In this document: positions 1,898-14,890 of the stretch, one piece after another
Numbering within the stretch: the first letter of the stretch is position 1
Layout of the letters: each line of letters opens with the position of its first letter
IMG/VR virus record: IMGVR_UViG_3300009093_000035
Span: 184,580-248,579 of that record
DNA length: 64,000 bases
Reading direction: 5' to 3' (one strand)
Made by a program: the position numbers and the translations under genes
Notes under the pieces: model-generated
Seen by the model: the letters and a program-made list of their open reading frames with translations, nothing else
What the model was told of the DNA's origin: nothing
The model's database searches: none

Positions 1898-1916
1898 GAG
1901 AACGGAACCTTACGCC

Positions 1917-3536: not shown

Positions 3537-3540
3537 GGAC

Positions 3541-3843: not shown

Positions 3844-3862
3844 AGAACGAGCGATAGCGAAA

Positions 3863-3933
3863 TTCTCGGCCGTGGGATCGAACCACGATTCGCGGATTCA
3901 AAGTCCGCTGTCCTGCCGTTGGACGAGCCGAGA
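3863..3933 (-). tRNA. tRNA-Gln(UUG)
   Basis: Cloverleaf; anticodon arm GCGGA-CTTTGAA-TCCGC. Confidence 0.9.
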
Positions 3934-3937
3934 TCAA

Positions 3938-4013
3938 TTCGGGAGGAAGGGGTCGAACCTTCTTCTGCGGATTCAAAGTCCGCGGTCCTAGCCAGCGCGT
4001 AGACGACTCCCGA
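3938..4013 (-). tRNA. tRNA-Gln(UUG)
   Basis: Cloverleaf; GCGGA-CTTTGAA-TCCGC. Confidence 0.85.
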
Positions 4014-4196
4014 TCAACGCTCGAAGGAGCGTCGTTGCAGGAGAGCCGGAAGCTGGCGCTTGAATTCGGGCCGCAAGATGGAGAACCTTCGCGAGAAGAT
4101 ACCCCACTCGGACGCGGACGTCTCCTCGAAAAGCGGGATGTACACATACCCGCCTTCAGTTCGGAGCCCGTCCTTCTTCGTCTCGCTCATCTTACA

Positions 4197-4268
4197 TGAC
4201 CCCACGGGGAATTGAACCCACGTTCCGGAGGGTGAAAATCTCCGATCCTAACCAATAGACGATGGGGC
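4197..4268 (-). tRNA. tRNA-Glu(UUC)
   Basis: Cloverleaf; loop TTTTCAC. Confidence 0.85.
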
Positions 4269-4289
4269 CAAGAGGAAACCAGAAACCAG

Positions 4290-4362
4290 AGCCCTCAGTC
4301 GGGATCGAACCGACGACATCCGCATTACAAGGGCGGTGCTCTTCCAACTGAGCTATGAGGGC
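4290..4362 (-). tRNA. tRNA-Thr(UGU)
   Basis: Cloverleaf; loop CTTGTAA. Confidence 0.9.
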
Positions 4363-4393
4363 GAAGGAAGGGGCGGCGAACCGCCCCTCTCAC

Positions 4394-6028
4394 TCACAGT
4401 GCCGCAGCCGCCTCCTGAGCGGCGACCGGGGCCGGGGCCTTCTCTTCGAGAGAGACGGCCTCGATCTTCTTCACCCAGTGATCCTTGCCCGAGCCCTTGA
4501 CGAACTCGGTCATGAGGGTGAAGACCTCGTCGGAGAAGCCGCCGACGTTGAGGATGTCCTCACGCGTCGGAGCCTGGCGAGAACCGTTCGGCGCGAGGTC
4601 GATGCAGACCATCTTCGCCTTCGGGTTCCGAGCGCGGAGAGCCTCCCACTCGACCATCGCCGCCGTCGGAGACGACGTGTGGCCAGAGGTGTAGGCGTTG
4701 TGGACGACCTTCGTGTCCATCCACGACTCGTTGTCCGAGGCGTAGGTGACGGCGTCCACCTTCTCCTTGTTGTGGTTGAGCGCCCTCATCGGCGCCGAGC
4801 AGTTCGTCCCGCCCGGCGGGCAAGACGCGATCTGGTTCGCGATCGTCATGATCGAGTCCCGCGGGTTGAACCGAAGGTTGATCACGTTCTCCGTGAACGG
4901 GAGAACGATCGCGTCCGGGTTCCGACGCATGAGCGTCGCAGCGATCAGGGCCGCCACGTCACGGCAGGTGACCTTCGTCGCCATCTCGCGCTTCCCCGTG
5001 ACCGGAGACGCCATCGACCCGGAGACGTCCGGGAAGACTGCGATTCGACCCTCGAAGGCCGGAACGTTCTTCGTCGCGATCTCCATCGCGTCCTGGAGAG
5101 CGTTCTGGACCTCCATCGGGACACCCGAGGTGTTCCGGTAGGCGATCAGGAGCTGGTACGGGAAGACCCGAGCCTTCGCGATCGACTCCTCGTCGCGGAG
5201 CTTCGCAGCGATGATCTTCACCATCGCCTTGTCCTCGAAGACGCCGTGGCGGAGGAACGTGTTGAGGTTCATCCGCACCGTCTGCCACGAGGCCGAACGT
5301 GCCAGCTCGATCCACTGGGCCTTCGTCAGCTTCGTGTTCGTGAGCATCAGGAACGGCACGTCCGGGATCGGACGCGACGGATCCTTCTTCCACGCCTCGA
5401 ACTCACGAAGCAGCGGGTCCGCCTTCTCCAGGTCGAACTTCTTCCCCACGAGCCACGCGTAGGTCTCCTTCCGAGCGTCCGTCGCCGGCTTCGGGTGGAC
5501 CATCTTGATCACGTCCGCGATCGACGGCTTGTCGCCCGTCGCCCGGATCAGCTGAGCATCGGTGCGCGCAGCGAACCACGCCTCGACCATCTTCTTCGGA
5601 GCCGTCCCGAGGGACTTCCGGCCGACCTTCCCGGAGCGGATGATCTGGACGAAGTTCCGGACCATCTTCGGGTTGTCGAGGATCCGCGAGAACGACGCCC
5701 GAAGGGCCGCGATACCTGCCGGTCCCCGAGTCGTGAGGTGAGCCGCGAGGAGCGCCGGAGCGTCCTTCATGAAGGCGGACTTCCGCCCGTAGACGGCCGT
5801 CTTCGCGACGAACTCCGGAGAGACCTCGGCCGCAAGCTTCAGGATCGCGTCCAGCTGCTCCTCGTCCGACGTGTAGAACGTCGACCCGAGACAGCCGGTT
5901 GCGGTGTACTGAGCGAGGGCCTCCTTCGGGCCCGCCTTGTAGGCGAGACCGCCGGCCGCGTTGAACATGTCGGCGATCGGCGCGACGCGACCCGCCGGAG
6001 CGGACTTGAAAAGCTTCTTGTTTGCCAC
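4394..6028 (-). CDS. rsr: Ro60/Rsr TROVE-domain RNA-binding protein with C-terminal vWA domain
   Basis: Likely GTG start at 6028 (MANKKLFKS, preceded by AAGGGG); N.AGG.AY, FVAKTAVYGR, MVRNF, VRMNL, ARVFPYQL, MIDAS DVSGSM, GGTNCS, SDNESW, GGFSD. Confidence 0.92.
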   Translation of the reverse strand: MANKKLFKSAPAGRVAPIADMFNAAGGLAYKAGPKEALAQYTATGCLGSTFYTSDEEQLDAILKLAAEVSPEFVAKTAVYGRKSAFMKDAPALLAAHLTTRGPAGIAALRASFSRILDNPKMVRNFVQIIRSGKVGRKSLGTAPKKMVEAWFAARTDAQLIRATGDKPSIADVIKMVHPKPATDARKETYAWLVGKKFDLEKADPLLREFEAWKKDPSRPIPDVPFLMLTNTKLTKAQWIELARSASWQTVRMNLNTFLRHGVFEDKAMVKIIAAKLRDEESIAKARVFPYQLLIAYRNTSGVPMEVQNALQDAMEIATKNVPAFEGRIAVFPDVSGSMASPVTGKREMATKVTCRDVAALIAATLMRRNPDAIVLPFTENVINLRFNPRDSIMTIANQIASCPPGGTNCSAPMRALNHNKEKVDAVTYASDNESWMDTKVVHNAYTSGHTSSPTAAMVEWEALRARNPKAKMVCIDLAPNGSRQAPTREDILNVGGFSDEVFTLMTEFVKGSGKDHWVKKIEAVSLEEKAPAPVAAQEAAAAL

Positions 6029-6055
6029 GGTAACACCCCTTCGAACAAAGGAGGG

Positions 6056-6085
6056 CTCTGGCAACTGGATAGGAGTTCCTTCAGG
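6056..6085. repeat. Arm 1 of a 30-nt long-range inverted repeat (partner 14426-14455)
   Basis: Reverse complement CCTGAAGGAACTCCTATCCAGTTGCCAGAG matches 14426-14455 at 28/30. Confidence 0.9.
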
Positions 6086-6229
6086 AAGATTGAACGTGAG
6101 GTCGTTGACGACGAACGCTTGCGTAGAGCGTTGTCCGCGGAGGTTCAGGAGGCTGATCAATTCCTCCCGTAGGCAAGCCTACTTAGCACCAACGTAGAGC
6201 GTCGCCGACAACTCGGCCTGACCTCACGA

Positions 6230-6301
6230 AGCGGGTGGTGGGAATCGAACCCACGATCTTCGCGTTGGCAACGCGCTGCTCTACCGCTGAGCTACACCCG
6301 C
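6230..6301 (-). tRNA. tRNA-Gly(GCC)
   Basis: Cloverleaf; loop TTGCCAA. Confidence 0.9.
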
Positions 6302-6367
6302 AAAAGAAACTGAGACCCATAGCGACCCGACGTCCCGCGATTACCTCCTCCCCAAGGAGAAACGACC

Positions 6368-6772
6368 ATGGGACTTGATATGCAGCAGCCGTCCGTTGTT
6401 ACCGTCGATGACACCAGCATCGACGCCCTCTACGATGGGATCCCCGAGGATTGCGTCGTGGGGTACGTTCTGAGGGTAATCGCCGCCTCGGACGCTGGAT
6501 ACGCCCACTGGGAGAAACGATTCCTCGCTCGTCGCGTGGGGGAAAGCGAAGTGATCATCGACGGGATCTGCGACGTCTTCCCGCCCATCCTGAACGCCGG
6601 AGCTTCAGCCTGGGCGGTCGAGGTATGCGTCGACAACGGATACGTCTGTGTAGACGTCCAAGGCTCGGCTGATACCCAGGTCTTCTGGTTGGTCGATCTC
6701 CACGGAGACGAGATCCCCACGGTCTCCAACGACCGCATGAACCTGAGGACCTCTCGGCGACTCGCGAGATAG
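6368..6772 (+). CDS. Hypothetical beta-rich protein, paralog of 36891-37298
   Basis: AAGGAG SD; colinear similarity with the 36891-37298 product. Confidence 0.7.
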   Translation: MGLDMQQPSVVTVDDTSIDALYDGIPEDCVVGYVLRVIAASDAGYAHWEKRFLARRVGESEVIIDGICDVFPPILNAGASAWAVEVCVDNGYVCVDVQGSADTQVFWLVDLHGDEIPTVSNDRMNLRTSRRLAR

Positions 6773-6786
6773 ACCCTCGAAGAATC

Positions 6787-6903
6787 TGTCGAGCGAAGCC
6801 GAGGTCTGGAATCGAACCAGAGGGTAGCTCCGCGGAAGCTGGGGACCACCCCACAACGGAATCGAACCGTCTCCCTGCCAATGTCTCCCGATCTCGCTCG
6901 ACA
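6787..6903 (-). ncRNA. Structured RNA with two T-loop arms in a closed stem
   Basis: 10-bp closing stem TGTCGAGCGA/TCGCTCGACA; ACGG-TTCGATT-CCGT and TCTGG-TTCGATT-CCAGA. Confidence 0.6.
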
Positions 6904-6988
6904 CGGAGAGTTGAGGTCCCGCCCCTCATGCCCTTACGGGCACCCATTGTTTAGCAAACAAGGCTGGTCCTCGACCAGGTAACCCTCC
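6904..6988 (-). tRNA. tRNA-Ser(GCU), non-canonical 8/4 fold
   Basis: 8-bp acceptor GGAGGGTT/AACTCTCC, G73, 6-bp D stem, loop TTGCTAA, long V arm, 4-bp T stem GAGG-GGCGGGA-CCTC. Confidence 0.8.
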
Positions 6989-7023
6989 AAACACGTTACT
7001 AACGGACGCTCACGCGAACCGGA

Positions 7024-7110
7024 CGGAGAGTGAGGGACTCGAACCCCCGAGGGCCTCTCGACCCATGCCGGTGTTCAAAGCCGGTGCCTTAGCCGCTAGG
7101 CTAACCCTCC
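7024..7110 (-). tRNA. tRNA-Ser(UGA)
   Basis: Canonical 7/5 cloverleaf, long V arm, loop TTTGAAC. Confidence 0.9.
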
Positions 7111-7191
7111 AGGAGTCTGAGAAACCCGCGCTAATCGAAGACGCCCTTGCCTCTTCGGAGGCATGCTCGCCAGAGCTAGGTTTCCCAGACA

Positions 7192-7276
7192 CGGAAGCTG
7201 GAGGTCCCGACCCTCAGAGCCTTTCGACTCCCAACCGCTTTCGAGACGGTGCCGATCCCTGATCGGTTCAACTTCC
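7192..7276 (-). tRNA. tRNA-Ser(CGA), non-canonical 8/4 fold
   Basis: Acceptor GGAAGTTG/CAGCTTCC, D stem CCGATC/GATCGG, loop CTCGAAA, T arm GAGG-GTCGGGA-CCTC. Confidence 0.8.
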
Positions 7277-7384
7277 AATTCTACGTTCTGGCCCCGCCAC
7301 GGAGCCTAGACGACCAGGCAAACTGGCGGGTCGATTGGATGGAGACCTTTGCGTCTCGGATCCGTCGCAGGCCAGAACCTAGAG

Positions 7385-7469
7385 CGGAAAGGAAGGGTCC
7401 CGACCCCCAGACCCTTTCGAGTCCCAACCGCTTTCCAAGCGGTGCCGGCCCCTGGCCAGTTCCCTTTCC
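7385..7469 (-). tRNA. tRNA-Ser(GGA), non-canonical 8/4 fold
   Basis: Acceptor GGAAAGGG/TCCTTTCC, D stem CTGGCC/GGCCGG, loop TTGGAAA, T arm GGGG-GTCGGGA-CCCT. Confidence 0.8.
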
Positions 7470-7473
7470 AAAC

Positions 7474-7634
7474 AGCTCGCTCGTCTCAGCGTGTATAGCC
7501 ATCACACTTCATCATCGTCGTCGCTACTCGGATTCGAACCGAGTCTCCTGGGCTCTACCATAGCGTGGCGCCAGCCACTCTCGCTCCGATTCTGATGCAC
7601 GGATTCGAACCGTGAACTCTGAGACTCACGAACC
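7474..7634 (-). ncRNA. Double tRNA-elbow RNA (permuted tRNA module enclosing a second T-arm module)
   Basis: Closing GTCTCAG/CTGAGAC; T arm CACGG-TTCGAAT-CCGTG; CATCA/TGATG; D-like GTGT-GATGGCTAT-ACAC; inner GCTA..CTCGG-TTCGAAT-CCGAG-TAGC. Confidence 0.6.
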
Positions 7635-7651
7635 TTCGGGCTGCAGCCCTA

Positions 7652-7772
7652 CCCGGAACGCGGGATTCGAACCCGCCTGAAGGGAAGGGTTGCTAGACCT
7701 CCCCACCGCCGCCTTTCCCTGTCCTCTAGCGAACAGGTACAGACAGCCGCTCACCATCTGGCGTACTTCCGA
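7652..7772 (-). ncRNA. tRNA-like RNA with elongated anticodon and variable arms
   Basis: CGGAA/TTCCG acceptor, AGATGGT D-loop, GCGGG-TTCGAAT-CCCGC T arm; two long hairpins with complementary loops GCTAGA/TCTAGC. Confidence 0.55.
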
Positions 7773-7844
7773 TCGGGGTGACAGGGATCGAACCTGCGAT
7801 TTCTCGACCCCCAGCCGAGCGCGATACCACTTCGCTACACCCCG
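7773..7844 (-). tRNA. tRNA-Pro(GGG)
   Basis: Cloverleaf; CTCGG-CTGGGGG-TCGAG. Confidence 0.9.
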
Positions 7845-7897
7845 AAGAAACTAGAAGACCGAGGTCCTGGAGCCTTTCAACTCCAGGACCGATCAGG

Positions 7898-8446
7898 TCA
7901 GGACCCCTCTTCGATCGGAGCATTCCAGTACACGTAGGAGGCCCACGCGTCCGGGATGTTCGTCAACGAAAACCGCATGGTGACTACCGGGAGATACGCG
8001 GGCTTCACGGGCTGCTTGCGCAGCTTCATCCCCGCGCGCTCCGGAGTCCGGTCGGCCTTCTTCTCGTTGCACGAGTAGCAGGCCATCACGATGTTCTCCC
8101 AGGTCGTCCTACCGCCGTGAGAGCGGGGGGTGACGTGGTCGTACGTGAGCTTCGAGAGCGGGAGCTTCCCGGTACCCGGAGGGCAGTACTGACAGGTGAA
8201 GTTGTCCCGCGTCGCTACGTTCACCCGAGAGAACTTCACGGCCTGCTTCTTGCCGCGGATCCTCCCGAGGAGACGAACGACGGCCGGCATCTTGAAGGAG
8301 AGGGTCACGTGGATTTCCTCGTTGTACTCCTCCACTACCTCGGCGACGTTGTCGAGGACCATACACACGGCCCTCTGCCAGTCCACGATCCTGTGGGGTA
8401 CCCACCCCTGATCCAATACGAGAGTTGTTTGCACGGCCTTACCCAC
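7898..8446 (-). CDS. HNH endonuclease (McrA-like)
   Basis: RDNFTCQYC, LTYDHVTPRSHGGRTTWENIVMACYSCNEKK; type often found in tRNA arrays. Confidence 0.92.
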   Translation of the reverse strand: MGKAVQTTLVLDQGWVPHRIVDWQRAVCMVLDNVAEVVEEYNEEIHVTLSFKMPAVVRLLGRIRGKKQAVKFSRVNVATRDNFTCQYCPPGTGKLPLSKLTYDHVTPRSHGGRTTWENIVMACYSCNEKKADRTPERAGMKLRKQPVKPAYLPVVTMRFSLTNIPDAWASYVYWNAPIEEGS

Positions 8447-8469
8447 CTTTCCTGAGCTGTTGTTTTGGT

Positions 8470-8552
8470 TGCGAGAGGAGGGAGTCGAACCCTCACGCCC
8501 CGAAGGGCACCGATTTTTGAGACCGGCGCGTCTGCCATTCCGCCACTCTCGC
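8470..8552 (-). tRNA. tRNA-Leu(CAA)
   Basis: Cloverleaf, V arm; loop CTCAAAA. Confidence 0.92.
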
Positions 8553-8578
8553 GTCTACTGAAACTTACTCGAAAGGGA

Positions 8579-8664
8579 TGCCCGGGGGGAGAGTCGAACT
8601 CCCACGACCGCTAGGATCGCCGCCTTCTGAGGACGGTGTGTCTACCAAGTTCCACCACCCGGGC
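8579..8664 (-). tRNA. tRNA-Leu(CAG)
   Basis: Loop CTCAGAA, V arm. Confidence 0.92.
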
Positions 8665-8680
8665 TCAAAAACCTACTCAC

Positions 8681-8762
8681 TGCGGAAGAGGGGACTTGAA
8701 CCCCTACGCCACAAGGACACTGGAACCTAAACCCAGCGCGTCTGCCATTCCGCCACTTCCGC
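8681..8762 (-). tRNA. tRNA-Leu(UAG)
   Basis: Loop TTTAGGT, V arm. Confidence 0.92.
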
Positions 8763-8768
8763 TCTACA

Positions 8769-8851
8769 TGGGGACGGGGGGACTTGAACCCCCACGTCAC
8801 GAAGGACACTAGCACCTCAAGCTAGCGCGTCTGCCTTTCCGCCACGTCCCC
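8769..8851 (-). tRNA. tRNA-Leu(GAG)
   Basis: Loop TTGAGGT, V arm. Confidence 0.92.
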
Positions 8852-8868
8852 ATTACGAATCGAACCAG

Positions 8869-8954
8869 TGCTCGGGGGGAGAGTCGAACTCCCATGACCG
8901 CGAAGGATCGTTGGATTCTTAGTCCAGTGTGTCTGCCAGTTCCACCACCCGAGC
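8869..8954 (-). tRNA. tRNA-Leu(AAG)
   Basis: Loop CTAAGAA, Leu-type D and V arms. Confidence 0.85.
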
Positions 8955-9030
8955 GTACGAACCGAAGATTGTCCAAGATCGAGAGGGGCCCTCCGAGGAA
9001 TCCCTCGGGGGCTGATCCTCCCGTCCGGTA

Positions 9031-9102
9031 TGCGCGAAGAGGGGATTGAACCCCCGACCGTCGCCGTGTAAAGGCGCTGCTCTTCCGCTGAGCTATCCGC
9101 GC
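9031..9102 (-). tRNA. tRNA-Val(UAC)
   Basis: Loop TTTACAC. Confidence 0.9.
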
Positions 9103-9107
9103 GTTGA

Positions 9108-9199
9108 TGGACCTACCTGGACTCGAACCAGGTCAATCGCCGCTCGACCACCCCAGGTTTTCCTTGCTGTGAGGCGATTACGTCACTGAGGTTAGGCCC
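9108..9199 (-). ncRNA. Mini-tmRNA-like RNA (tRNA-like domain only)
   Basis: Acceptor GGGCCTA/TAGGTCC with G3.U70 and A73, stemless D region, helix AATCGCC/GGCGATT, GA then CCTGG-TTCGAGT-CCAGG. Confidence 0.6.
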
Positions 9200-9302
9200 A
9201 TCGAATTGGTTCTCCATGCGCGCTATTCGGAGGAGAAGCCCGAAATGTACGGCGACCGGACTACGTGGCCCACACCACCCGTTATGTCGCTGCGCTTTGG
9301 TC

Positions 9303-9375
9303 TGCACGACCGGAGGATCGAACTCCGCTAGAACGGCTTGTGATACCGTCGCCCTCTCCAGATGGCTCGCCGTGC
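9303..9375 (-). tRNA. tRNA-Val(CAC), atypical D arm
   Basis: GACGGT-ATCACAA-GCCGTT; acceptor GCACGGC/GTCGTGC. Confidence 0.75.
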
Positions 9376-9521
9376 GTCAGGCTCGTCTCGACCCGCGGCC
9401 CCCGAGAGGGCGGAACCCCATCAGGACCATCACTACCGCCACCGGGGGCCAGAGGATGGACTCGACTGCGAGACGAACACGTACTTTGAAGGGCATCCCC
9501 TACCCTACTCGAAGAAACCAA

Positions 9522-9593
9522 TCGGGGTGACAGGGATCGAACCTGCGATCTCACCGTCCCGAACGGTGCGCGATACCACTTCGCTACACCCCG
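9522..9593 (-). tRNA. tRNA-Pro(CGG)
   Basis: CACCG-TTCGGGA-CGGTG. Confidence 0.92.
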
Positions 9594-9769
9594 ATAAATC
9601 GTACTTCGGCGGGTCTCTCACCCCGCATCCTTCCAGGTCCGGATTCCCGTCCGTCTACGCGGCCTTGTACCGCTCCCTCGCTGCTTGTCGTCAGCGGCCC
9701 TGTACGATCGTTCACGAGAAGGGTTCGCCCCGACGCTGCAGACGCCGAGACTACTTTTCCGACTCGCTA

Positions 9770-9838
9770 TCCCTCCCGACGGAATCGAACCGCCTCGTAC
9801 GCCCGTATGAAAGGCATCGCCTCGCCAGAAAGAGAGGG
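9770..9838 (-). tRNA. tRNA(CAU) (Met or Ile2) lacking a D stem
   Basis: Acceptor CCCTCTC/GGGAGGG, loop TTCATAC, T arm GGCGG-TTCGATT-CCGTC. Confidence 0.6.
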
Positions 9839-9845
9839 GTGGACA

Positions 9846-9918
9846 CGTCTCCAGTAGGATTCGAACCTACAATGGACCCTTCGGAGGGGTCAGTGATATC
9901 CAGTTTCACCATGGAGAC
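9846..9918 (-). tRNA. tRNA-Arg(CCG)
   Basis: GACCC-CTCCGAA-GGGTC. Confidence 0.88.
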
Positions 9919-9941
9919 ATTGGCCTTCTACCAAACCAGAG

Positions 9942-10013
9942 CGTCTTCGGAAGGATTCGAACCTTCAATAAGCGGTTCGTAGCCGCTCGTGATATCCATT
10001 TCACCACGAAGAC
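9942..10013 (-). tRNA. tRNA-Arg(ACG)
   Basis: AGCGG-CTACGAA-CCGCT. Confidence 0.9.
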
Positions 10014-10031
10014 ATGAGTCAGAAACAGGAG

Positions 10032-10103
10032 CGTCCACGGAGGGAGTTGAACCCACGACCTGTCGCTTCGTAGGCGACCGCTCTTCCTCTGAGCTACGCG
10101 GAC
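10032..10103 (-). tRNA. tRNA-Arg(ACG)
   Basis: GTCGC-CTACGAA-GCGAC. Confidence 0.9.
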
Positions 10104-10115
10104 ATGAACCGAGAG

Positions 10116-10187
10116 CGTCCCCGGAGGGATTCGAACCCCCGACCGACCGCTTAGAAGGCGATCGCTCTTCCTCTGAGCTACGAGGAC
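10116..10187 (-). tRNA. tRNA-Arg(UCU)
   Basis: Loop CTTCTAA. Confidence 0.9.
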
Positions 10188-10214
10188 ATTGGCTTGCACG
10201 GAAACCCCTACGAA

Positions 10215-10286
10215 AGGTGCGGGTGAGAATCGAACTCACCTCAACCAGGGTTGCAATCTGATGCCCTCAGCCAGAGGGACCGCACC
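10215..10286 (-). tRNA. tRNA-Cys(GCA)
   Basis: Loop TTGCAAC, U73. Confidence 0.8.
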
Positions 10287-10299
10287 AAAGAGAACTAGA

Positions 10300-10363
10300 G
10301 GCCGACAAGTAGCGCCGAGAGGGGGTTACCGTGCAAAGGTGTACTCCCGGCAAGTATTCGGCC
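10300..10363 (-). ncRNA. Y RNA-like #1 (minimal)
   Basis: 5' GGCCGAAU..GGAGUACA / 3' CUUGUCGGCC stem shared with five other copies. Confidence 0.7.
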
Positions 10364-10365
10364 AG

Positions 10366-10437
10366 AGCGGGTGGCGGGGATCGAACCCGCGACGTCCTGG
10401 ATGGGAACCAAGCGCTCTACCGCTGAGCCACACCCGC
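10366..10437 (-). tRNA. tRNA-Gly(CCC)
   Basis: Loop TTCCCAT. Confidence 0.9.
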
Positions 10438-10523
10438 TTGTATTAGATCGAAGTTACGGAAGTTACCAGACCTTATCGAACCTCATGGTAACTCTCGGCT
10501 ACATGGACGGAACCAGAAACCAG

Positions 10524-10594
10524 AGCGGGCAGCGAGAATCGAACTCGCGTCTTCGGCTTGGAAGGCCGAGGCCAAGCCACTTGACCATGCCCGC
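10524..10594 (-). tRNA. tRNA-Gly(UCC)
   Basis: TCGGC-CTTCCAA-GCCGA. Confidence 0.88.
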
Positions 10595-10606
10595 ATACGA
10601 ACCGGA

Positions 10607-11012
10607 TGGACTCGTCCGGAATTGAACCGGAGTCCACGAAGTCTACTACGATCGAGTACCACGCGCGTCTTCAACTCTTACGCCTGTCTTTCTAACGAGG
10701 AAGGCGCGAGGCTTGACAACCTCTCTTTCGGAACTCCCCGCGAAGTCTGCTCGGTTCCCCGCCTCGACTTCGATCGTCCCTCAGATCGCCTTTCGGCTCC
10801 CGCTGAGGTACAGCCGGGATTCCCCTAGCTCGATTACGCCAACGAGGAGAGTGCTAGGGACTCTCCTCGCCGACGGATCAGGCCGCCTGAGCGAGCTGAT
10901 CGTAGCTGCTGTCGTTCGCAGTTACTGTTGGTTGGCTTGATAACCCGGCCTGCCTACCACCCGGAGCGCGCACTCTCTCGTTTCGAACCCCATGTCGAAA
11001 CCTGTCGAGCCC
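10607..11012 (-). ncRNA. ssrA: tmRNA; tag ANDSSYDQLAQAA* at 10878-10919
   Basis: 5' GGGCTCGACAGGTTTCGAC, 3' GGACTCCGGTTCAATTCCGGACGAGTCCA, G3.U70, resume context TAACT-GCG AAC GAC. Confidence 0.95.
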
Positions 11013-11028
11013 GAAGACACTAGACCAG

Positions 11029-11101
11029 AGCCATCGGCGGGAGTTGAACCCGCGACCTCTCGCATACCAAGCGAGCGCTCTTCCAACTGAGCTACGAAGG
11101 C
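11029..11101 (-). tRNA. tRNA-Thr(GGU)
   Basis: Loop TTGGTAT. Confidence 0.9.
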
Positions 11102-11106
11102 AAAAG

Positions 11107-11179
11107 AGCCGGCAGGGGCGCTCGAATCCCCCATCTCCCGCTTACGAAACGGGCGCATCGCCATCTATGCTTTACCGGC
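11107..11179 (-). tRNA. tRNA-Thr(CGU)
   Basis: Loop TTCGTAA. Confidence 0.8.
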
Positions 11180-11276
11180 AAGTTCCCAAGGTGTCCCGAG
11201 AGGACCACTCTCGTTCTTCCGAGGGCGCTTGGACGTTTTTCAAGGGTTGCTGGTTAGGCTCCTCTCACCGTCCTAG

Positions 11277-11348
11277 TGGATCCTACAGGGATTGAACCTG
11301 CGGCCTCTCGGGTGCAAACCGAGCGCTCTCCCGCTGAGCTAAGGACCC
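11277..11348 (-). tRNA. tRNA-Ala(UGC)
   Basis: Loop TTTGCAC, G3.U70. Confidence 0.92.
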
Positions 11349-11352
11349 AAAG

Positions 11353-11420
11353 TGGACCGAGCGGATTCGAACCGCTTCCTTCCGTGTTCCACGGACGCTC
11401 TTCCTTTTGAGCTACGATCC
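11353..11420 (-). pseudogene. tRNA-like element with collapsed anticodon loop
   Basis: Normal D and T arms, but anticodon arm TCCGTG-GAA-CACGGA and 6-bp acceptor. Confidence 0.6.
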
Positions 11421-11478
11421 TCTGTCTCGCCCCGGAAGCGAAACAGTTCGTCAATCGTCCGCGCGAACGACCAACTAG

Positions 11479-11551
11479 TGGACAAGAGGGGGATCGAACC
11501 CCTGACCTACGCCATGCCATGGCGTCGCTCTCCCAGCTGAGCTACTCGCCC
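11479..11551 (-). tRNA. tRNA-Ala(GGC)
   Basis: Loop ATGGCAT, G3.U70. Confidence 0.92.
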
Positions 11552-11820
11552 AAAACGACCCTCGGTAATACAGGCCGCCAACGAAGGAACAAGGCTACTC
11601 TCGTCCGACTCCCGAAGGAATCGTTCTCGTACGTGTCTCCGACCCGGGGCTCCTAGAAGCGCGGAACCGGAACCGACGCGAGATGATCCTCACCGACAAG
11701 GATCGACAGGTACTGCACGGTCTGCTTGCGCCTACCGTTTCCCTCCTTGAGTTTGGAGCCGGACCCGCCTAGGGTTTCTCGCCACCACAGCGTCCTAGGT
11801 CGGGTTGGTGTCCGGCGTGA

Positions 11821-11890
11821 TCGCGGCCCCAAGAGTTGAACTTGGCATCCCTGGGTTATGAGCCCTGGGCAGCGTCCCCGCTGCACCGCA
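11821..11890 (-). tRNA. Atypical initiator-like tRNA(CAU) with miniature D arm
   Basis: GGG-CTCATAA-CCC; D arm CAGCG-GGGA-CGCTG. Confidence 0.6.
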
Positions 11891-11897
11891 TCTACAA

Positions 11898-11971
11898 GAG
11901 CGCGAGAAGGATTTGAACCTCCGACCTACGGGTTATGAGCCCGTCGAGCTGCCAGACTGCTCCACCGCGCA
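11898..11971 (-). tRNA. tRNA-fMet(CAU)
   Basis: Three G-C pairs in the anticodon stem, 1-72 mismatch. Confidence 0.85.
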
Positions 11972-12043
11972 TCGTCCAGGTGGGGATCGAACCCACGACC
12001 TTCCGCGTGTCGAGCGGATGCTCTTCCTCTGAGCCACTGGACG
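11972..12043 (-). tRNA. tRNA-Val(GAC)
   Basis: TCCGC-TCGACAC-GCGGA. Confidence 0.88.
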
Positions 12044-12061
12044 GTCTCGATCTAAGAACCA

Positions 12062-12134
12062 TGGAGCAGATGGGATTCGAACCCAACGCACCTCGTGTAT
12101 CAGACGAAGTAGTGCGACCAGCAACTTCCGCTCC
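12062..12134 (-). tRNA. tRNA-Ile(GAU)
   Basis: Loop CTGATAC. Confidence 0.75.
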
Positions 12135-12154
12135 GTTTTCGAGCCAGACACTAG

Positions 12155-12228
12155 GGTGATCGGGGGGAGTTGAACCCACCGTACCTCGGGTCACAGCCGA
12201 GTGCCTTAACCGTTAGGCTACGACCACC
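12155..12228 (-). tRNA. tRNA-His(GUG) with encoded G-1
   Basis: CTCGG-CTGTGAC-CCGAG; G-1:C73. Confidence 0.9.
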
Positions 12229-12239
12229 ATGAAGAGATT

Positions 12240-12371
12240 CGGGTGACAAGAGCGGAGAAGACGTTTTTTGGACTGCCGCTCTACCATCTGAGCTACCACC
12301 CCCTTTCGGAGACGGGCGGGACTCGAACCCGCGACCCGCAGTGTTGTTGTAGTCCTATTCCAATTCACCCG
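12240..12371 (-). ncRNA. Y RNA-like #2 (YrlA-type, permuted tRNA module)
   Basis: CGGGUGAAU..GACUACA / CUUGUCACCCG; T arm GCGGG-TTCGAGT-CCCGC, GAAA-capped acceptor, then D arm TAGCTCAGATGGTAGAGC. Confidence 0.85.
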
Positions 12372-12372
12372 A

Positions 12373-12445
12373 CGTTCCCGGGAGGACTCGAACCTCCGAC
12401 CTGCCGTTTAGGAAACGGCCCCTCTATCCACTGAGGTACGGGAAC
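12373..12445 (-). tRNA. tRNA-Arg(CCU)
   Basis: GCCGT-TTCCTAA-ACGGC. Confidence 0.9.
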
Positions 12446-12449
12446 ACGA

Positions 12450-12588
12450 TTGCGAGAGAGGGACTTGAACCCCCACGAGCGCTTCCGTTACTTCCCTGGG
12501 AAGCGCTTCCCGTACGGGTTTCACGGATGGGCCTAGGACCCTGTCTCTCCGAGTCGCCTCGGCGCGTCTGCCATTTCGCCATCTCGCA
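12450..12588 (-). ncRNA. Anticodon-less oversized tRNA-Leu mimic A
   Basis: Acceptor TGCGAGA/TCTCGCA, Leu D arm GGCGAAATGGCAGACGC, anticodon arm capped by GCGA, three hairpins in the variable region, normal T arm. Confidence 0.7.
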
Positions 12589-12596
12589 TCGAACAC

Positions 12597-12748
12597 TAGG
12601 GAGAAGGGGAATCGAACCCCCACCGGGCTCTACAGGACTCTCCGCGGTTCGCGACCCTCGGATCCTCCCGTTGGCTCGGGGTGCGCACCCCTTACCGTCC
12701 CTGCCGGAACTTTCATCCCGGTGCGTCTACCAGTTCCGCCATCTCCCG
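12597..12748 (-). ncRNA. Anticodon-less oversized tRNA-Leu mimic B
   Basis: Leu D arm GGCGGAACTGGTAGACGC, CCGGGAT-GAAA-GTTCCGG, ~80-nt structured variable region, normal T arm. Confidence 0.7.
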
Positions 12749-12770
12749 TCAACGAACGGAAGGAAAAGTT

Positions 12771-12903
12771 TGGGCGACAAGTGTTGGCGAAGATCTTTTC
12801 GTCGCTCTACCAACTGAGCTACCGCCCCGTGAAAGTGGGGCGGGCTGGACTCGAACCAGCGGCCTCCGGCTTGAAATGCTGTAATCCTCTCCGAATTCAC
12901 CCA
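12771..12903 (-). ncRNA. Y RNA-like #3 (YrlA-type)
   Basis: UGGGUGAAU..GAUUACA / CUUGUCGCCCA; GCTGG-TTCGAGT-CCAGC, closed acceptor CCGCCCC/GGGGCGG, D arm TAGCTCAGTTGGTAGAGC. Confidence 0.85.
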
Positions 12904-12904
12904 A

Positions 12905-12977
12905 CGTTCCCGGAGGGGATCGAACCCCCGACCTGCGGTTTCGAAGACCGCCGCTCTTCCGGCTGAGCTACGAGAAC
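12905..12977 (-). tRNA. tRNA-Arg(UCG)
   Basis: GCGGT-CTTCGAA-ACCGC. Confidence 0.9.
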
Positions 12978-13019
12978 CCTCGATTTATGGCTTCGAGGTA
13001 CCTTTGCGCGCGAAGGAAG

Positions 13020-13094
13020 CGTCCCGTGGGGGATTTGAACCCGCCGTCGCCAGATTGAGAGTCTAGCATCCTAGGCCAACTAGAAGAACGGGAC
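13020..13094 (-). tRNA. tRNA-Glu(CUC)
   Basis: Loop CTCTCAA. Confidence 0.88.
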
Positions 13095-13099
13095 ATAGA

Positions 13100-13175
13100 G
13101 GCGAGACAAGAGAGACCGAGACGAGGGGCTTTCGCCCCACATTACCCAAAATGTAGTCCCGATCGAATTCTCACC
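13100..13175 (-). ncRNA. Y RNA-like #4 (minimal)
   Basis: GGUGAGAAU..GACUACA / CUUGUCUCGCC; GGGGC-GAAA-GCCCC hairpin. Confidence 0.72.
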
Positions 13176-13176
13176 A

Positions 13177-13249
13177 TGGACAGGAGGGGGATTGAACCCC
13201 TGACCTCTGCATTGCGAACGCAGCGCTCTCCCAGCTGAGCTACCCGCCC
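13177..13249 (-). tRNA. tRNA-Ala(CGC)
   Basis: Loop TTCGCAA, G3.U70. Confidence 0.92.
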
Positions 13250-13390
13250 AAACGAAAACCAGGTTCTCGAATCGGACTCGGGTAGGTCGATTCCCTTTCG
13301 GGAGGTGGCCTACCCTATCCCTAGCTCCTCGGGCCTGGCGCTACCGAGAAGATCCGAGCCAGCGAGGACCGAGGTCCCCGCGAAGATAGC

Positions 13391-13514
13391 CGTGCGACAA
13401 GAGTGACAGCGACGTTTTCTAGGCCCGAGCCTCGCTCCCTTTCGGGAACGACCAGGATTCGAACCTGGCTCGATTGTTGTTCATACAATGTAGTCCCCAT
13501 CGAGTATTCGCACG
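13391..13514 (-). ncRNA. Y RNA-like #5 (T arm plus GAAA-closed acceptor, degenerate D arm)
   Basis: CGUGCGAAU..GACUACA / CUUGUCGCACG; CCAGG-TTCGAAT-CCTGG; TCGTTCCC-GAAA-GGGAGCGA. Confidence 0.8.
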
Positions 13515-13516
13515 AG

Positions 13517-13589
13517 TCGGGATGACCGGATTCGAACCGACGTCTCCTGCGCCCAAGGCAGGTGCTAAACCAGGCTCAGCTACATCCCG
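13517..13589 (-). tRNA. tRNA-Pro(UGG)
   Basis: CCTGC-CTTGGGC-GCAGG. Confidence 0.9.
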
Positions 13590-13600
13590 AACAGAAACCA

Positions 13601-13676
13601 TGCAGCGAACTGGAGTTGAACCAGTGCCTCCCGGGTTTCAACCGAGCGCTCTACCTATGGGCTGAGCTATCGCTGC
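13601..13676 (-). tRNA. tRNA-Phe(GAA)
   Basis: Loop TTGAAAC. Confidence 0.85.
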
Positions 13677-13679
13677 GTA

Positions 13680-13752
13680 TGCTACGGGTCGGAATTGAAC
13701 CGACGACACCCCGCTCTTCAGGCGAGTGCTCTACCAACTGAGCTACCGTAGC
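13680..13752 (-). tRNA. tRNA-Phe(GAA)
   Basis: Loop CTGAAGA. Confidence 0.9.
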
Positions 13753-13758
13753 AAGACA

Positions 13759-13832
13759 CGCCCCCGAAGAGAATCGAACTCTCCTCGACCCTGCTTGACA
13801 AGCAGGCGTCTTCACCAGAGGACTACGAGGGC
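13759..13832 (-). tRNA. tRNA-Asp(GUC)
   Basis: CCTGC-TTGTCAA-GCAGG. Confidence 0.88.
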
Positions 13833-13850
13833 AGGAACCAGGAAATTTAA

Positions 13851-13939
13851 GGCGACAAAGATCCCGAAGACACAGAGCGAGCCTTTCGGCCCTCTCTTCT
13901 GGTTTTGGTAGAAGAATGTAGTCTTCAGAGCATTCGCCC
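13851..13939 (-). ncRNA. Y RNA-like #6 (minimal)
   Basis: GGGCGAAU..GACUACA / UUUGUCGCC; GAAA-capped hairpin. Confidence 0.7.
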
Positions 13940-13940
13940 A

Positions 13941-14008
13941 CGGGCTGTTAGGGACTCGAACCCAGCGCGGTCGGTTTTGGAGGCCAACCTGTGCCCTGCA
14001 CCCAGCCC
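13941..14008 (-). tRNA. tRNA-Trp(CCA) with miniature D arm
   Basis: Loop CTCCAAA; D arm GTGC-AGG-GCAC. Confidence 0.7.
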
Positions 14009-14157
14009 AATAGCTGAGACCGTCCGGCCTACGGGCCCGCACGATCTCGTACCTCCTCCTACACATGGCAGGTGAGATCTAAGAATAGCGACCGGCGCTC
14101 GCCCCGAGTGCTCGTCCTCCCTACCGGAGGCTGCGTTCTCGAAGTGCTTTCGGTCTA

Positions 14158-14229
14158 CTCCTGGGGCAGGAGTCGAACCTGCGGTAGGCGAGTTAACAGC
14201 TCGCTGCCTTACCACTTGGCTACCCAGGA
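14158..14229 (-). tRNA. tRNA-Asn(GUU)
   Basis: GCGAG-CTGTTAA-CTCGC. Confidence 0.92.
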
Positions 14230-14269
14230 AGGATCTCAACGGACCCCATCGGAAGAAACGAAGGAGGAA

Positions 14270-14341
14270 CTCCGGCAGTAGGGGTCGAACCTACGACATC
14301 CTGGTTAACAGCCAGGCGCTCTTCCACTGAGCTATACCGGA
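14270..14341 (-). tRNA. tRNA-Asn(GUU)
   Basis: CCTGG-CTGTTAA-CCAGG. Confidence 0.92.
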
Positions 14342-14425
14342 ATGTGAGGGAGGCCCTCCCGTACCCGAGCCCTTGCGAGGCGATTCGAGTACGAGAGTCC
14401 CCTCTCCGCGCCCTTGGGGAGGGCG

Positions 14426-14455
14426 CCTGAAGGAACTCCTATTCAGTTGTCAGAG
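14426..14455. repeat. Arm 2 of the long-range inverted repeat; boxA-like on the minus strand
   Basis: Minus strand CTCTGACAACTGAATAGGAGTTCCTTCAGG. Confidence 0.85.
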
Positions 14456-14516
14456 ACCTCGGAACACAGAGAGCCGTAGTTCACTACGTACTCCAGCCAC
14501 AGGGTGGCTTTTTCAA

Positions 14517-14587
14517 TTCCCAGTCGAGGATTCGAACCTCAGTTGTCCGAGTCAGATTCGGAAGTCCTGCCGCTAGACGAACCGGGA
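14517..14587 (-). tRNA. tRNA-Gln(CUG)
   Basis: TCCGA-ATCTGAC-TCGGA. Confidence 0.88.
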
Positions 14588-14659
14588 TGGGACACCGGGG
14601 ACTCAAACCCCGTTCTTCCGATTAAGAGTCGGATGCTTCATCACTAAAGCTTGTGTCCC
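14588..14659 (-). tRNA. tRNA-Lys(CUU)
   Basis: TCCGA-CTCTTAA-TCGGA. Confidence 0.85.
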
Positions 14660-14677
14660 GAACTGGAACCGAGGAAC

Positions 14678-14749
14678 TGGGACCGGTGGGGATCGAACCC
14701 ACGACCGTCGGGTTAAAAGCCCGCTGTTCTACCGCTGAACTACGGTCCC
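14678..14749 (-). tRNA. tRNA-Lys(UUU)
   Basis: Loop CTTTTAA. Confidence 0.9.
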
Positions 14750-14796
14750 GAGAGGGGAACCGCAGGGTTTGAGGTTGACGTACATCTTTCGAACCA

Positions 14797-14879
14797 TGGA
14801 GACGCCAGGAATCGAACCTGATTTCCTCCGAAGAGGGGCGGGGTTACAGTCCGCCTACGAGGCCACTCGTATCATCTCC
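14797..14879 (-). tRNA. tRNA-Tyr(GUA)
   Basis: Loop CTGTAAC, V arm. Confidence 0.8.
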
Positions 14880-14890
14880 AAAAGGAACCA

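What the first reader, a model, noticed from the sequence alone, without database searches (positions are those of the whole stretch)
4394..13939. Phage Ro60 with a family of six modular Y-RNA-like partners hidden in a tRNA array
Seen: six spacers (10300-10363, 12240-12371, 12771-12903, 13100-13175, 13391-13514, 13851-13939; all minus strand, co-oriented with the TROVE gene) share one terminal stem, 5' stem-GAAU..GA(C/U/G)UACA and 3' (C/U)UUGUC-stem. The outer pairs covary (GGCCGA/UCGGCC, GGGUGA/UCACCC, GUGCGA/UCGCAC, GGUGAGA/UCUCGCC). The interiors differ: two carry a full permuted tRNA module (T arm, loop-closed acceptor, D arm), one has only T arm plus acceptor, and three have small hairpins. 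Established: bacterial Y RNAs bind Ro60 through a terminal stem, YrlA has this permuted tRNA-like module, and Deinococcus Y RNA tethers Rsr to PNPase. Inference: one Ro60 uses a cassette of interchangeable RNA adaptors to recruit different effectors or act as decoys during infection.
Basis: partly seen in the sequence, partly recalled or inferred. Interest (0 to 1): 0.92.

Follow-up and report, generated by a model that had tools for sequence, protein, structure and literature searches.

The report
Six phage Y RNAs beside Ro60
A giant phage that carries its own Ro60 RNA-binding protein also encodes six different small Y-RNA-type partner RNAs between its tRNA genes. This kind of RNA is already known, including in phages, but the number, the graded variety and the tRNA-linked layout are new detail.

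Summary
Exactly six minus-strand spacers in the tRNA array share one module: terminal stem P1, GAAU, internal loop, stem P2, GA(C/U/G)UACA, then (C/U)UUGUC-P1'. A 5'-motif scan finds these six and nothing else (0.27 expected by chance).

Rfam's YrlA model matches Y3 (51 bits) and Y2 (40 bits). Both are significant but below its curated 69-bit cut-off. Its consensus carries the same GAAUGC/CUAC/CUUGUC signature.

In 160 other Ro60 loci I found 209 complete modules on the Ro60 strand and 1 on the opposite strand. P1 and P2 covary strongly. Related jumbo phages, including Myxococcus phage Mx1, hold class-specific orthologues at the same tRNA slots, up to eight per phage. Each starts 0-3 nt after a tRNA 3' end.

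These are therefore real Y RNA genes: two YrlA-type, one with a reduced tRNA-like domain, and three short hairpin types.

Little of this is new in kind. YrlA was reported in 22 phages in 2014. Thermus phage phiLo Ro60 was shown in 2025 to bind two phage-encoded Y-like RNAs plus host PNPase. The new points are the 6-8-member conserved cassette, its fusion to tRNA 3' ends, and a widespread short class with no Rfam family. The idea of interchangeable adaptors or decoys remains inference.

The parts
4394..6160 (-). Ro60/TROVE gene. This is the ORF as listed; the true start is probably the GTG at 6028, giving 544 aa.
   Evidence: Pfam vWA_Ro60 and TROVE. PDB matches to Rsr 2nvo, phage phiLo 9kop and human RO60. 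The alignment with relatives begins at residue 45-46.
10300..10363 (-). Y1, a short hairpin Y RNA (64 nt). P1 is GGCCGA/UCGGCC and P2 carries GGGAG-UACA...CUCUC. It starts 1 nt after tRNA-Gly(ccc), with a 13-nt spacer before tRNA-Cys.
   Evidence: R1 scores 44.5 bits, but Y1 is a seed member. Orthologues in the same Gly(ccc)-Cys slot are L004:2901-2987 and L005:6362-6429; the P1 pair C-G changes to U-A in L004.
12240..12371 (-). Y2, a YrlA-type Y RNA (132 nt). It has a V region, a T arm, a 7-8-bp acceptor hairpin closed by GAAA, and a D arm. It abuts tRNA-Arg(cct), with a 12-nt spacer before tRNA-His.
   Evidence: Rfam YrlA 39.9 bits, E 4.9e-6. Orthologues in the Arg(cct)-His slot occur in L004, L005, L006 and L008. 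The L004 orthologue has three compensatory P1 changes.
12771..12903 (-). Y3, a YrlA-type Y RNA (133 nt) with a 7-bp acceptor hairpin. It starts 1 nt after tRNA-Arg(tcg).
   Evidence: Rfam YrlA 51.3 bits, E 2.5e-9, over the full model 1-114. The minimum-free-energy fold shows T, acceptor and D hairpins inside P1/P2.
13100..13175 (-). Y4, a short Y RNA (76 nt) with two inner hairpins, the second capped by GAAA. It starts directly after tRNA-Ala(cgc), with a 5-nt spacer before tRNA-Glu(ctc).
   Evidence: R1 40.9 bits, seed member. Fold z-score -4.28. Orthologues are L005:5083-5163 and L006:2633-2721. The L006 copy keeps a T-arm-like hairpin, and the inner hairpin has 3 compensatory pairs.
13391..13514 (-). 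Y5, an intermediate Y RNA (124 nt). It has a V hairpin, a T arm, an acceptor hairpin (GAAA loop) and a mini hairpin with GG at the D-arm position. It starts 1 nt after tRNA-Pro(tgg).
   Evidence: Fold z-score -3.48. The four-sequence alignment A4 predicts 33 pairs, 13 of them with compensatory changes.
13851..13939 (-). Y6, a short Y RNA (89 nt) with two inner hairpins. It has the full GGCGAAUG motif. It starts 1 nt after a degenerate tRNA-Trp-like gene, with a 17-nt spacer before tRNA-Asp.
   Evidence: R1 40.6 bits, E 9e-10, and Y6 is not in the seed. Orthologues follow tRNA-Trp in L005 and L006.
3863..14974 (-). Co-oriented array of 45 tRNA genes plus a tmRNA (10607-11012). It holds the Y RNAs and surrounds Ro60.
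   Evidence: ARAGORN and Rfam. Promoter- and terminator-like sites inside the array are no more frequent than in shuffles.
13941..14008 (-). Degenerate tRNA-Trp(CCA)-like gene immediately 5' of Y6.
   Evidence: Read from the sequence. ARAGORN and Rfam do not call it. L005 and L006 have a normal tRNA-Trp in the same slot, and BLAST finds matches in L101, L007 and L048.

Best explanation
The six elements are phage-encoded Y RNAs, small noncoding RNAs that bind the phage's own Ro60.

All six share a constant module. It consists of terminal stem P1, whose last two pairs are G-C and A-U, followed by AU(G/A/U)C, then an asymmetric internal loop, stem P2, a single-stranded UACA(U), an A-rich stretch before P2', and (C/U)U(U/C)GUC-P1'. 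This corresponds to the Ro60-binding end of bacterial YrlA and YrlB.

The variable inner part runs from a complete tRNA-like domain without an anticodon arm (Y2, Y3), through a reduced version (Y5), to one or two small hairpins (Y4, Y6, Y1).

The following steps are inferred, not shown. The RNAs are transcribed as part of the polycistronic tRNA array. Each 5' end is made by the cut that matures the 3' end of the tRNA lying 0-2 nt upstream. These tRNA genes do not encode CCA, so an RNase Z-type cut is plausible. Each 3' end is made by RNase P at the next tRNA, followed by trimming back to P1. Ro60 binding then stabilises the RNA.

By analogy with D. radiodurans Yrn1, Salmonella YrlA and Thermus phage phiLo Yrl1/2, the RNAs would gate Ro60's cavity and tether it to host PNPase or other partners. 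This would direct degradation or quality control of structured RNAs (tRNA, rRNA) during infection, with each conserved class giving a different partner or specificity.
For: Shown:
- The six copies and their shared module are real.
- Rfam YrlA matches Y3 and Y2 with E 2.5e-9 and 4.9e-6, and the family consensus carries cgaAUGC...CUAc...AcUuGucG.
- The 5' motif occurs 313 times on the Ro60 strand and 17 times on the opposite strand in Ro60 loci. Complete modules are 209 to 1.
- Of 211 motif hits with a downstream TTGTC, 159 have at least 4 further flanking pairs.
- On 59 short elements, 94.1% of cells pair against 70.2% in shuffles, and the covariation score is 0.661 against 0.188 (0 of 500 shuffles reach it). 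P2 played no part in selecting these elements.
- A model built from those elements finds Y6 de novo at 40.6 bits.
- Orthologues occupy the same tRNA slots in L004, L005 (8 copies), L006 (7), L008 and Mx1 (2), with class-specific interiors and compensatory changes.
- In the reverse search, at least 18 of 58 IMG/VR stretches with the motif lie on Ro60 contigs.
- Every copy starts 0-2 nt after a tRNA 3' end.

From the literature:
- YrlA and YrlB bind Rsr, and bacteria have at least two Y RNAs each (PMC4201824).
- D. radiodurans Yrn2, tRNA-Asp and Yrn1 are made as one precursor (PMC4201824).
- Phage phiLo Ro60 binds two phage Yrl RNAs and host PNPase (PMC12135203).

Context: an RlaP RNA-repair nucleotidyltransferase lies in the window, and Ro60 sits in co-oriented tRNA arrays in many phage contigs (649 same-strand tRNAs, 0 opposite).
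Against: - There is no expression, end-mapping or binding data for any of these RNAs.
- Y2 and Y3 score below Rfam's YrlA gathering cut-off (69 bits), and the YrlB model gives only about 20 bits.
- The published GNCGAAN0-1G motif is fully met only by Y6. Y2 and Y3 have UGAA, Y4 has AGAA, and one orthologue (L004:238-369) has CAGAU in place of GAAU.
- P1 positions 3-6 in alignment A3 were part of the selection rule, so only P1 positions 1-2 and P2 are unbiased there.
- Partners and targets are inferred by analogy only.
- The processing route assumes host enzymes that were not examined.
Confidence: 0.82

Rival explanations
1. Only the YrlA-type copies (Y2, Y3) are functional Y RNAs. The shorter ones (Y1, Y4, Y5, Y6) are decaying duplicates that have lost the tRNA-like domain and do nothing.
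For: The classes form a reduction series. The L006 orthologue of Y4 still has a T-arm-like hairpin. Some slots are empty in some relatives; for example, the Phe-Pro slot is occupied in L005 and L006 but not in the window.
Against: The short classes are kept at orthologous slots across phages whose Ro60 is only 70-77% identical, with compensatory changes in P1, P2 and the inner hairpins. Short hairpin forms are the majority class in Ro60 loci generally (105 of 159). Experimentally Rsr-bound short Y RNAs exist: YrlB and Yrn2 (PMC4201824).
Confidence: 0.06
2. The elements are tRNA-trailer processing or stability structures of the polycistronic array and act independently of Ro60.
For: All six start 0-2 nt after a tRNA 3' end. 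There is no excess of promoter- or terminator-like sites in the array.
Against: The same module occurs in multiple copies next to Ro60 in loci with no tRNA genes at all, for example L138 and L144 with 5 copies and 0 tRNAs. Only 36 of 209 modules abut a tRNA. The module is the conserved end of the YrlA family. Most spacers in this 45-tRNA array lack it.
Confidence: 0.04
3. The tRNA-like copies (Y2, Y3, perhaps Y5) act mainly as free tRNA mimics. They would be decoys or competitive substrates for host tRNA-directed enzymes or defence nucleases, and Ro60 would serve only as a stabiliser.
For: They have intact T and D loops with the G18-G19 and T-loop elements, and a 7-bp acceptor hairpin. M. smegmatis YrlA, which also has a 7-bp stem, is cut by RNase P and receives CCA (PMC4201824). 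The phage invests heavily in tRNA supply.
Against: They have no anticodon stem-loop, which is the target of the classical anticodon nucleases. Three of the six have no tRNA-like part. The Ro60-binding module is the most conserved part of every copy.
Confidence: 0.08
4. The six matches are a chance recurrence of short motifs in GC-rich spacers.
For: None beyond the shortness of the individual motifs.
Against: Six hits were observed where 0.27 were expected, and no shuffle reached six. The strand bias is 209 to 1, and the covariation score exceeded all 500 shuffles.
Confidence: 0.005

Closest known systems
YrlA (Rfam RF02553; Chen et al. 2014, PMC4201824)
   Same: Y2 and Y3 have the same order of parts: P1 with GAAU, P2, CUAC/UUAC, V region, T arm, loop-closed acceptor stem, D arm, then CUUGUC-P1'. 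They are co-oriented with Ro60, and YrlA was already reported in 22 phages.
   Different: Their scores of 51 and 40 bits fall below the 69-bit gathering cut-off. They lie 6-7 kb from Ro60, beyond the 4-kb rule used in 2014, and inside a tRNA array. In mycobacteriophage Cali a single YrlA lies directly upstream of Ro.
Short hairpin Y RNAs: Salmonella and M. smegmatis YrlB, D. radiodurans Yrn2
   Same: Y1, Y4 and Y6 are short RNAs that have the Ro60-binding end and a small apical region. They coexist with a tRNA-like Y RNA in the same genome, as in all three bacteria studied (PMC4201824).
   Different: There is no significant match to Rfam YrlB, a Salmonella-specific model (20 bits against a cut-off of 97). 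The window holds three distinct short classes, each conserved across related phages.
Thermus phage phiLo Ro60 with Yrl1 and Yrl2 (PMC12135203)
   Same: A phage-encoded Ro60 with more than one phage-encoded Y-like RNA upstream of the gene, and a stem-bulge-stem structure with a CGAA motif.
   Different: phiLo has two RNAs, shown to bind in vitro together with host PNPase. Here there are six (up to eight in a relative), with graded tRNA mimicry, fused to tRNA 3' ends, and with no experimental data.
D. radiodurans Yrn2-tRNA-Asp-Yrn1 polycistronic precursor (PMC4201824)
   Same: Y RNAs are co-transcribed with a tRNA and released by processing.
   Different: That case is one tRNA in a bacterial rsr locus. 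Here the layout is systematic, with every Y RNA abutting a tRNA 3' end in a 45-tRNA phage array.
Metazoan Y RNA paralogue sets (four human Y RNAs; nematode stem-bulge RNAs)
   Same: One Ro60 is served by several Y RNAs that share the Ro-binding stem and differ in the loop that binds other proteins.
   Different: Those are Pol III genes with a La-binding U-tail and a bulged-C helix, and they have no tRNA-like domain. This comparison rests on my own knowledge and was not tested here.

Membership tests
Y RNA (Ro60-associated ncRNA) | Encoded near a Ro60/TROVE gene and on the same strand | tested here: met
   All six are on the minus strand, 4.1-7.8 kb upstream of Ro60. Across 160 Ro60 loci there are 209 modules on the Ro60 strand and 1 on the opposite strand.
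Y RNA (Ro60-associated ncRNA) | The 5' and 3' ends pair into a stem that carries the conserved Ro60-binding motif (bacterial GNCGAAN0-1G on the 5' strand) | tested here: inconclusive
   The stem is present in all six and covaries. The full motif is met only by Y6. Y1 and Y5 have CGAA, Y2 and Y3 have UGAA, and Y4 has AGAA. In the 59-sequence alignment the variable base is the last variable P1 pair, which switches between C-G and U-A.
Y RNA (Ro60-associated ncRNA) | Physically bound and stabilised by Ro60 | not testable with these tools
   This needs RIP-seq, EMSA or Northern blots in a Ro60 deletion.
YrlA (RF02553) | tRNA-like domain with a T arm, a closed acceptor stem and a D arm, and no anticodon arm | tested here: met
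   Y2 and Y3 align over model positions 1-114 with T, acceptor and D helices. Y5 has T and acceptor helices and a mini D hairpin. Y1, Y4 and Y6 lack the domain.
YrlA (RF02553) | Score at or above Rfam's gathering cut-off (69 bits) | tested here: not met
   Y3 scores 51.3 bits and Y2 39.9 bits. The clade orthologues score 48-52 bits. The E-values are still significant (2.5e-9 and 4.9e-6). Weaker YrlA hits that span tandem tRNAs (10049-10168, 13700-13812) are the known dimeric-tRNA artefact (PMC4201824).
YrlB (RF02565) | Match to the Rfam model | tested here: not met
   Y1 scores 20.3 bits and Y4 20.1 bits against a cut-off of 97, with E about 5. The resemblance is in architecture only.
RYPER-type Ro60-Y RNA-PNPase machine | The Y RNA tethers Ro60 to PNPase | not testable with these tools
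   This is an analogy with D. radiodurans, Salmonella and phage phiLo (PMC4201824, PMC12135203). No PNPase gene was looked for beyond the ORFs scanned.

The most novel reading that the evidence does not exclude
A clade of jumbo phages, which includes the culturable Myxococcus phage Mx1, builds its Ro60 particles from a conserved set of 6-8 non-redundant Y RNAs. These would be produced stoichiometrically as the 3' trailers of specific tRNAs. In this reading each class, from a full tRNA mimic with a 7-bp, RNase P- and CCA-competent acceptor stem down to a minimal hairpin, directs Ro60 and host nucleases to a different RNA target or partner. The phage tRNA supply and the remodelling of host RNA decay or repair would then be controlled as a single unit.
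Probability: 0.15. Interest if true: 0.75.

Novelty: new variant of a known kind. Interest (0 to 1): 0.5.

Why it matters
What Y RNAs do, and why cells keep several of them, remains largely unresolved outside D. radiodurans. This phage clade offers a natural series: one Ro60, and six to eight Y RNAs that keep the Ro-binding end while progressively losing the tRNA-like domain. Each class is conserved across relatives, and one relative, Mx1, grows on a laboratory Myxococcus strain.

That makes the adaptor hypothesis testable by deletion and RIP-seq. The data also show that a short Y RNA class with no Rfam family is the commonest Ro60 neighbour in metagenomes. Annotation pipelines that use Rfam cut-offs would miss all six genes here. 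In the Mx1 GenBank record one of the two orthologues lies under a CDS annotated as a hypothetical protein.

Tried and rejected
- **Megablast against phage records.** Searching the array and 24 kb of the window against 50,697 phage records gave no match. The phage is known only as IMG/VR contig IMGVR_UViG_3300009093_000035.
- **Neighbouring ORFs.** Pfam and PHROGs on the ORFs next to the array were uninformative.
- **MAFFT on 12 elements of unequal length.** The 3' ends misaligned, so alignment A2 was not used. I used length-matched short elements instead (A3).
- **Model R1 and the long elements.** R1 cannot span the long interiors of Y2 and Y3, and it aligns Y5 only partially at 12.4 bits. Those three rest on Rfam YrlA and the class alignments.
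- **Reverse co-occurrence.** For about 39 of 58 IMG/VR stretches the DNA returned was too short to tell whether Ro60 is on the contig.
- **A possible second Ro60.** The 694-aa VWA protein at 54562-56646 shows no similarity to Ro60 or to any PDB chain, so I rejected that idea.
- **Weak YrlA hits across tandem tRNAs.** I dismissed these as the artefact described in PMC4201824.
- **Papers.** Two Wolin-lab reviews (PMC10870794, PMC6047535) and the supplementary tables of the 2014 paper are not held. I therefore could not check how many YrlA copies per phage were listed there.
- **Small class alignments.** MAFFT misaligned the interiors of A6 and A8, so they add little beyond P1.

Full report
**1. 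What is in the window.**
The window is part of a 248.6-kb IMG/VR contig. No GenBank phage is similar to it at the DNA level.

Positions 3863-14974 hold 45 tRNA genes and a tmRNA, all on the minus strand. Inside this array, the ORF at 4394-6160 (minus strand) is a Ro60 orthologue. It matches Pfam vWA_Ro60 (2.9e-21) and TROVE. It also matches D. radiodurans Rsr, Thermus phage phiLo Ro60 and human RO60 over its full length. The true start is probably the GTG at 6028.

The closest named relative is the Ro60 of Myxococcus phage Mx1, at 43% identity.

**2. Checking the observation.**
The six elements exist exactly as described.

- The 5' signature GAAT-N5-12-GRBTACA occurs six times in 64 kb, only at the six sites. 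Shuffles give 0.27 on average, and none of 100 reaches six.
- Requiring a 4-bp stem outside GAAT...TTGTC recovers the same six on the minus strand.
- All six fold into P1, an asymmetric internal loop and P2, with z-scores from -1.1 to -4.3.
- Y2 and Y3 carry a T arm, a 7-bp loop-closed acceptor stem and a D arm.
- Y5 has a T arm, an acceptor hairpin and a mini-hairpin with a conserved GG at the D-arm position.
- Y1, Y4 and Y6 have only small hairpins.
- A covariance model built mainly from other genomes (R1) finds Y6 de novo at 40.6 bits and finds no seventh copy.

**3. Identity.**
With E-value reporting, Rfam's YrlA model matches Y3 (51.3 bits, E 2.5e-9) and Y2 (39.9 bits, E 4.9e-6). Both scores are below the curated 69-bit cut-off, so routine annotation would miss them. 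The YrlB model gives only chance-level scores. Weak YrlA hits that span tandem tRNAs are the dimeric-tRNA artefact described in PMC4201824.

**4. Comparative evidence.**
I fetched 160 other Ro60 loci from IMG/VR and metagenomes.

- The 5' motif occurs 313 times on the Ro60 strand and 17 times on the other strand.
- Complete modules, allowing CU(U/C)GUC at the 3' end, are 209 to 1.
- Without selecting for pairing, 159 of 211 motif pairs have at least 4 extra flanking base pairs.
- On 59 short elements (alignment A3), a structure with P1 (8 bp) and P2 (5 bp) is 94.1% paired against 70.2% in shuffles. The covariation score is 0.661 against 0.188, and 0 of 500 shuffles reach it. Sliding the 3' partners drops pairing to 34-57%.
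- P2 was not part of the selection rule, so it counts as independent evidence.
- Searching IMG/VR for the RNA motif alone returned 58 stretches. At least 18 lie on contigs that encode Ro60. The others were too short to judge.

**5. The clade.**
Five contigs with Ro60 at 70-77% identity, plus Mx1, share the order of the tRNA array. They carry Y RNAs at the same slots:

- Gly(ccc)-Y1-Cys
- Arg(cct)-Y2-His
- Ala(cgc)-Y4-Glu(ctc)
- Pro(tgg)-Y5
- Trp-Y6-Asp

A further slot, Phe-Y-Pro, is empty in the window. L005 has eight copies, L006 seven and Mx1 two. One Mx1 orthologue lies under a CDS annotated as a hypothetical protein.

The orthologues keep class-specific interiors and show compensatory changes:
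- three in P1 of the L004 orthologue of Y2;
- 13 of 33 pairs in the Y5 class;
- three in the inner hairpin of the Y4 class.

In the window, every Y RNA begins 0-2 nt after a tRNA 3' end (0-3 nt in the relatives). The 3' side is followed by a 5-17-nt pyrimidine-rich spacer or by another RNA.

Mycobacteriophage Cali, by contrast, has a single YrlA directly upstream of Ro, and R1 finds nothing there.

**6. How it most likely works.**
What is shown: these are conserved, structured RNA genes, linked to Ro60 in position and strand, with the YrlA-type Ro-binding end.

What is inferred:
- They are cut out of the polycistronic tRNA transcript. Promoter- and terminator-like sites are not enriched inside the array.
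- The 5' end of each comes from 3' maturation of the upstream tRNA. These tRNA genes do not encode CCA.
- The 3' end comes from RNase P cleavage at the next tRNA, followed by trimming.
- They bind Ro60 and gate or tether it.

Published work supports the analogy. [quoted passage not shown] Phage phiLo Ro60 binds two phage Yrl RNAs and host PNPase (PMC12135203).

The genomic context points to a role in tRNA and RNA quality control or repair during infection. An RlaP RNA-repair nucleotidyltransferase is in the window. Ro60 is also embedded in co-oriented tRNA arrays in 47 of 65 long viral loci.

Conservation of each class argues for non-redundant roles, but partners and targets are unknown. A decoy role against anticodon nucleases is unlikely, because the mimics have no anticodon arm.

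**7. Novelty.**
The kind of RNA is known, and phage examples are published. The new points are:
- a cassette of six to eight paralogues conserved across a jumbo-phage clade;
- a graded loss of the tRNA-like domain;
- systematic fusion to tRNA 3' ends;
- the finding that a short class with no Rfam family is the commonest Ro60-linked RNA in metagenomes (105 of 159);
- multi-copy sets of three or more in 22 of 161 sequences scanned (the 160 loci plus the window).

I rate this a new variant of a known kind, of moderate interest.

Noticed in passing
L006:2798-2935 and L008:2996-3133: This looks like a circularly permuted Y module. The 3' motif CU(C/U)GUCGC is joined to the 5' motif GCGAAUGC...GGGACUACA through a GCAA tetraloop that closes P1, and the RNA ends lie on the distal side (outer stem GGAGGCU/AGCCUCC). 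The minimum-free-energy folds agree with this reading. It occupies the Glu(ctc)-Arg(cct) slot.
   Followed up: partly
window 12598-12747 (-) and 12451-12587 (-): Two tandem tRNA-like RNAs lie just 3' of Y3. Each has a 7-bp acceptor stem, a class-II-type D arm and a T arm. The anticodon arm is replaced by a stem with a GCGA tetraloop in one and a 6-nt loop in the other, and each has an extra arm of about 70 nt. ARAGORN does not call them, Rfam gives only a chance-level tRNA-Sec hit, and no relatives were found in the fetched loci.
   Followed up: partly
window 13251-13390 (-); L004:2010-2145: A conserved three-hairpin RNA of unknown type lies between Y5 and tRNA-Ala(cgc). It is 73% identical to L004, with compensatory stem differences and a conserved GCGCCAGGCC loop. 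There is no Rfam match.
   Followed up: partly
window 13941-14008 (-): A degenerate tRNA-Trp(CCA)-like gene with a C31-A39 mismatch and a tiny D loop, missed by ARAGORN and Rfam. ARAGORN calls no other tRNA-Trp in window positions 1-20000, the range scanned, which contains the whole array. Relatives have a normal tRNA-Trp in this slot.
   Followed up: partly
65 viral Ro60 loci of at least 15 kb (within L003-L081): Phage Ro60 genes usually sit inside co-oriented tRNA arrays. Of 65 loci of at least 15 kb, 47 have at least 1 same-strand tRNA and 23 have at least 10. In total there are 649 same-strand tRNAs and none on the opposite strand.
   Followed up: partly
window 37295-38287 (-): An RlaP-family nucleotidyltransferase (RNA repair pathway, Pfam 1.5e-17). 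Also in the window are a GroEL-like chaperonin (30856-32919), a ThyX-domain protein (42451-43917), a C39 peptidase (25050-25949) and an HNH endonuclease inside the tRNA array (7898-8446).
   Followed up: no
L001:3631-3753 (Mx1, OR576727.2 45524-45646): A CDS annotated as a hypothetical protein in the Mx1 record overlaps the Y RNA orthologue at L001:3628-3731 and is probably not a real gene.
   Followed up: no
window 11552-11820 (-) and 11180-11275 (-): Two long spacers in the tRNA array have no tRNA, no Y module and no relatives in the fetched loci. Rfam calls a weak tRNA (41.5 bits) at 11107-11179 that ARAGORN misses.
   Followed up: no
L010:14667-15118: Four tandem, near-identical short Y modules spaced 142 nt apart lie downstream of Ro60 on a 354-kb AT-rich viral contig. 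This is an independent expansion of Y RNA copy number.
   Followed up: no
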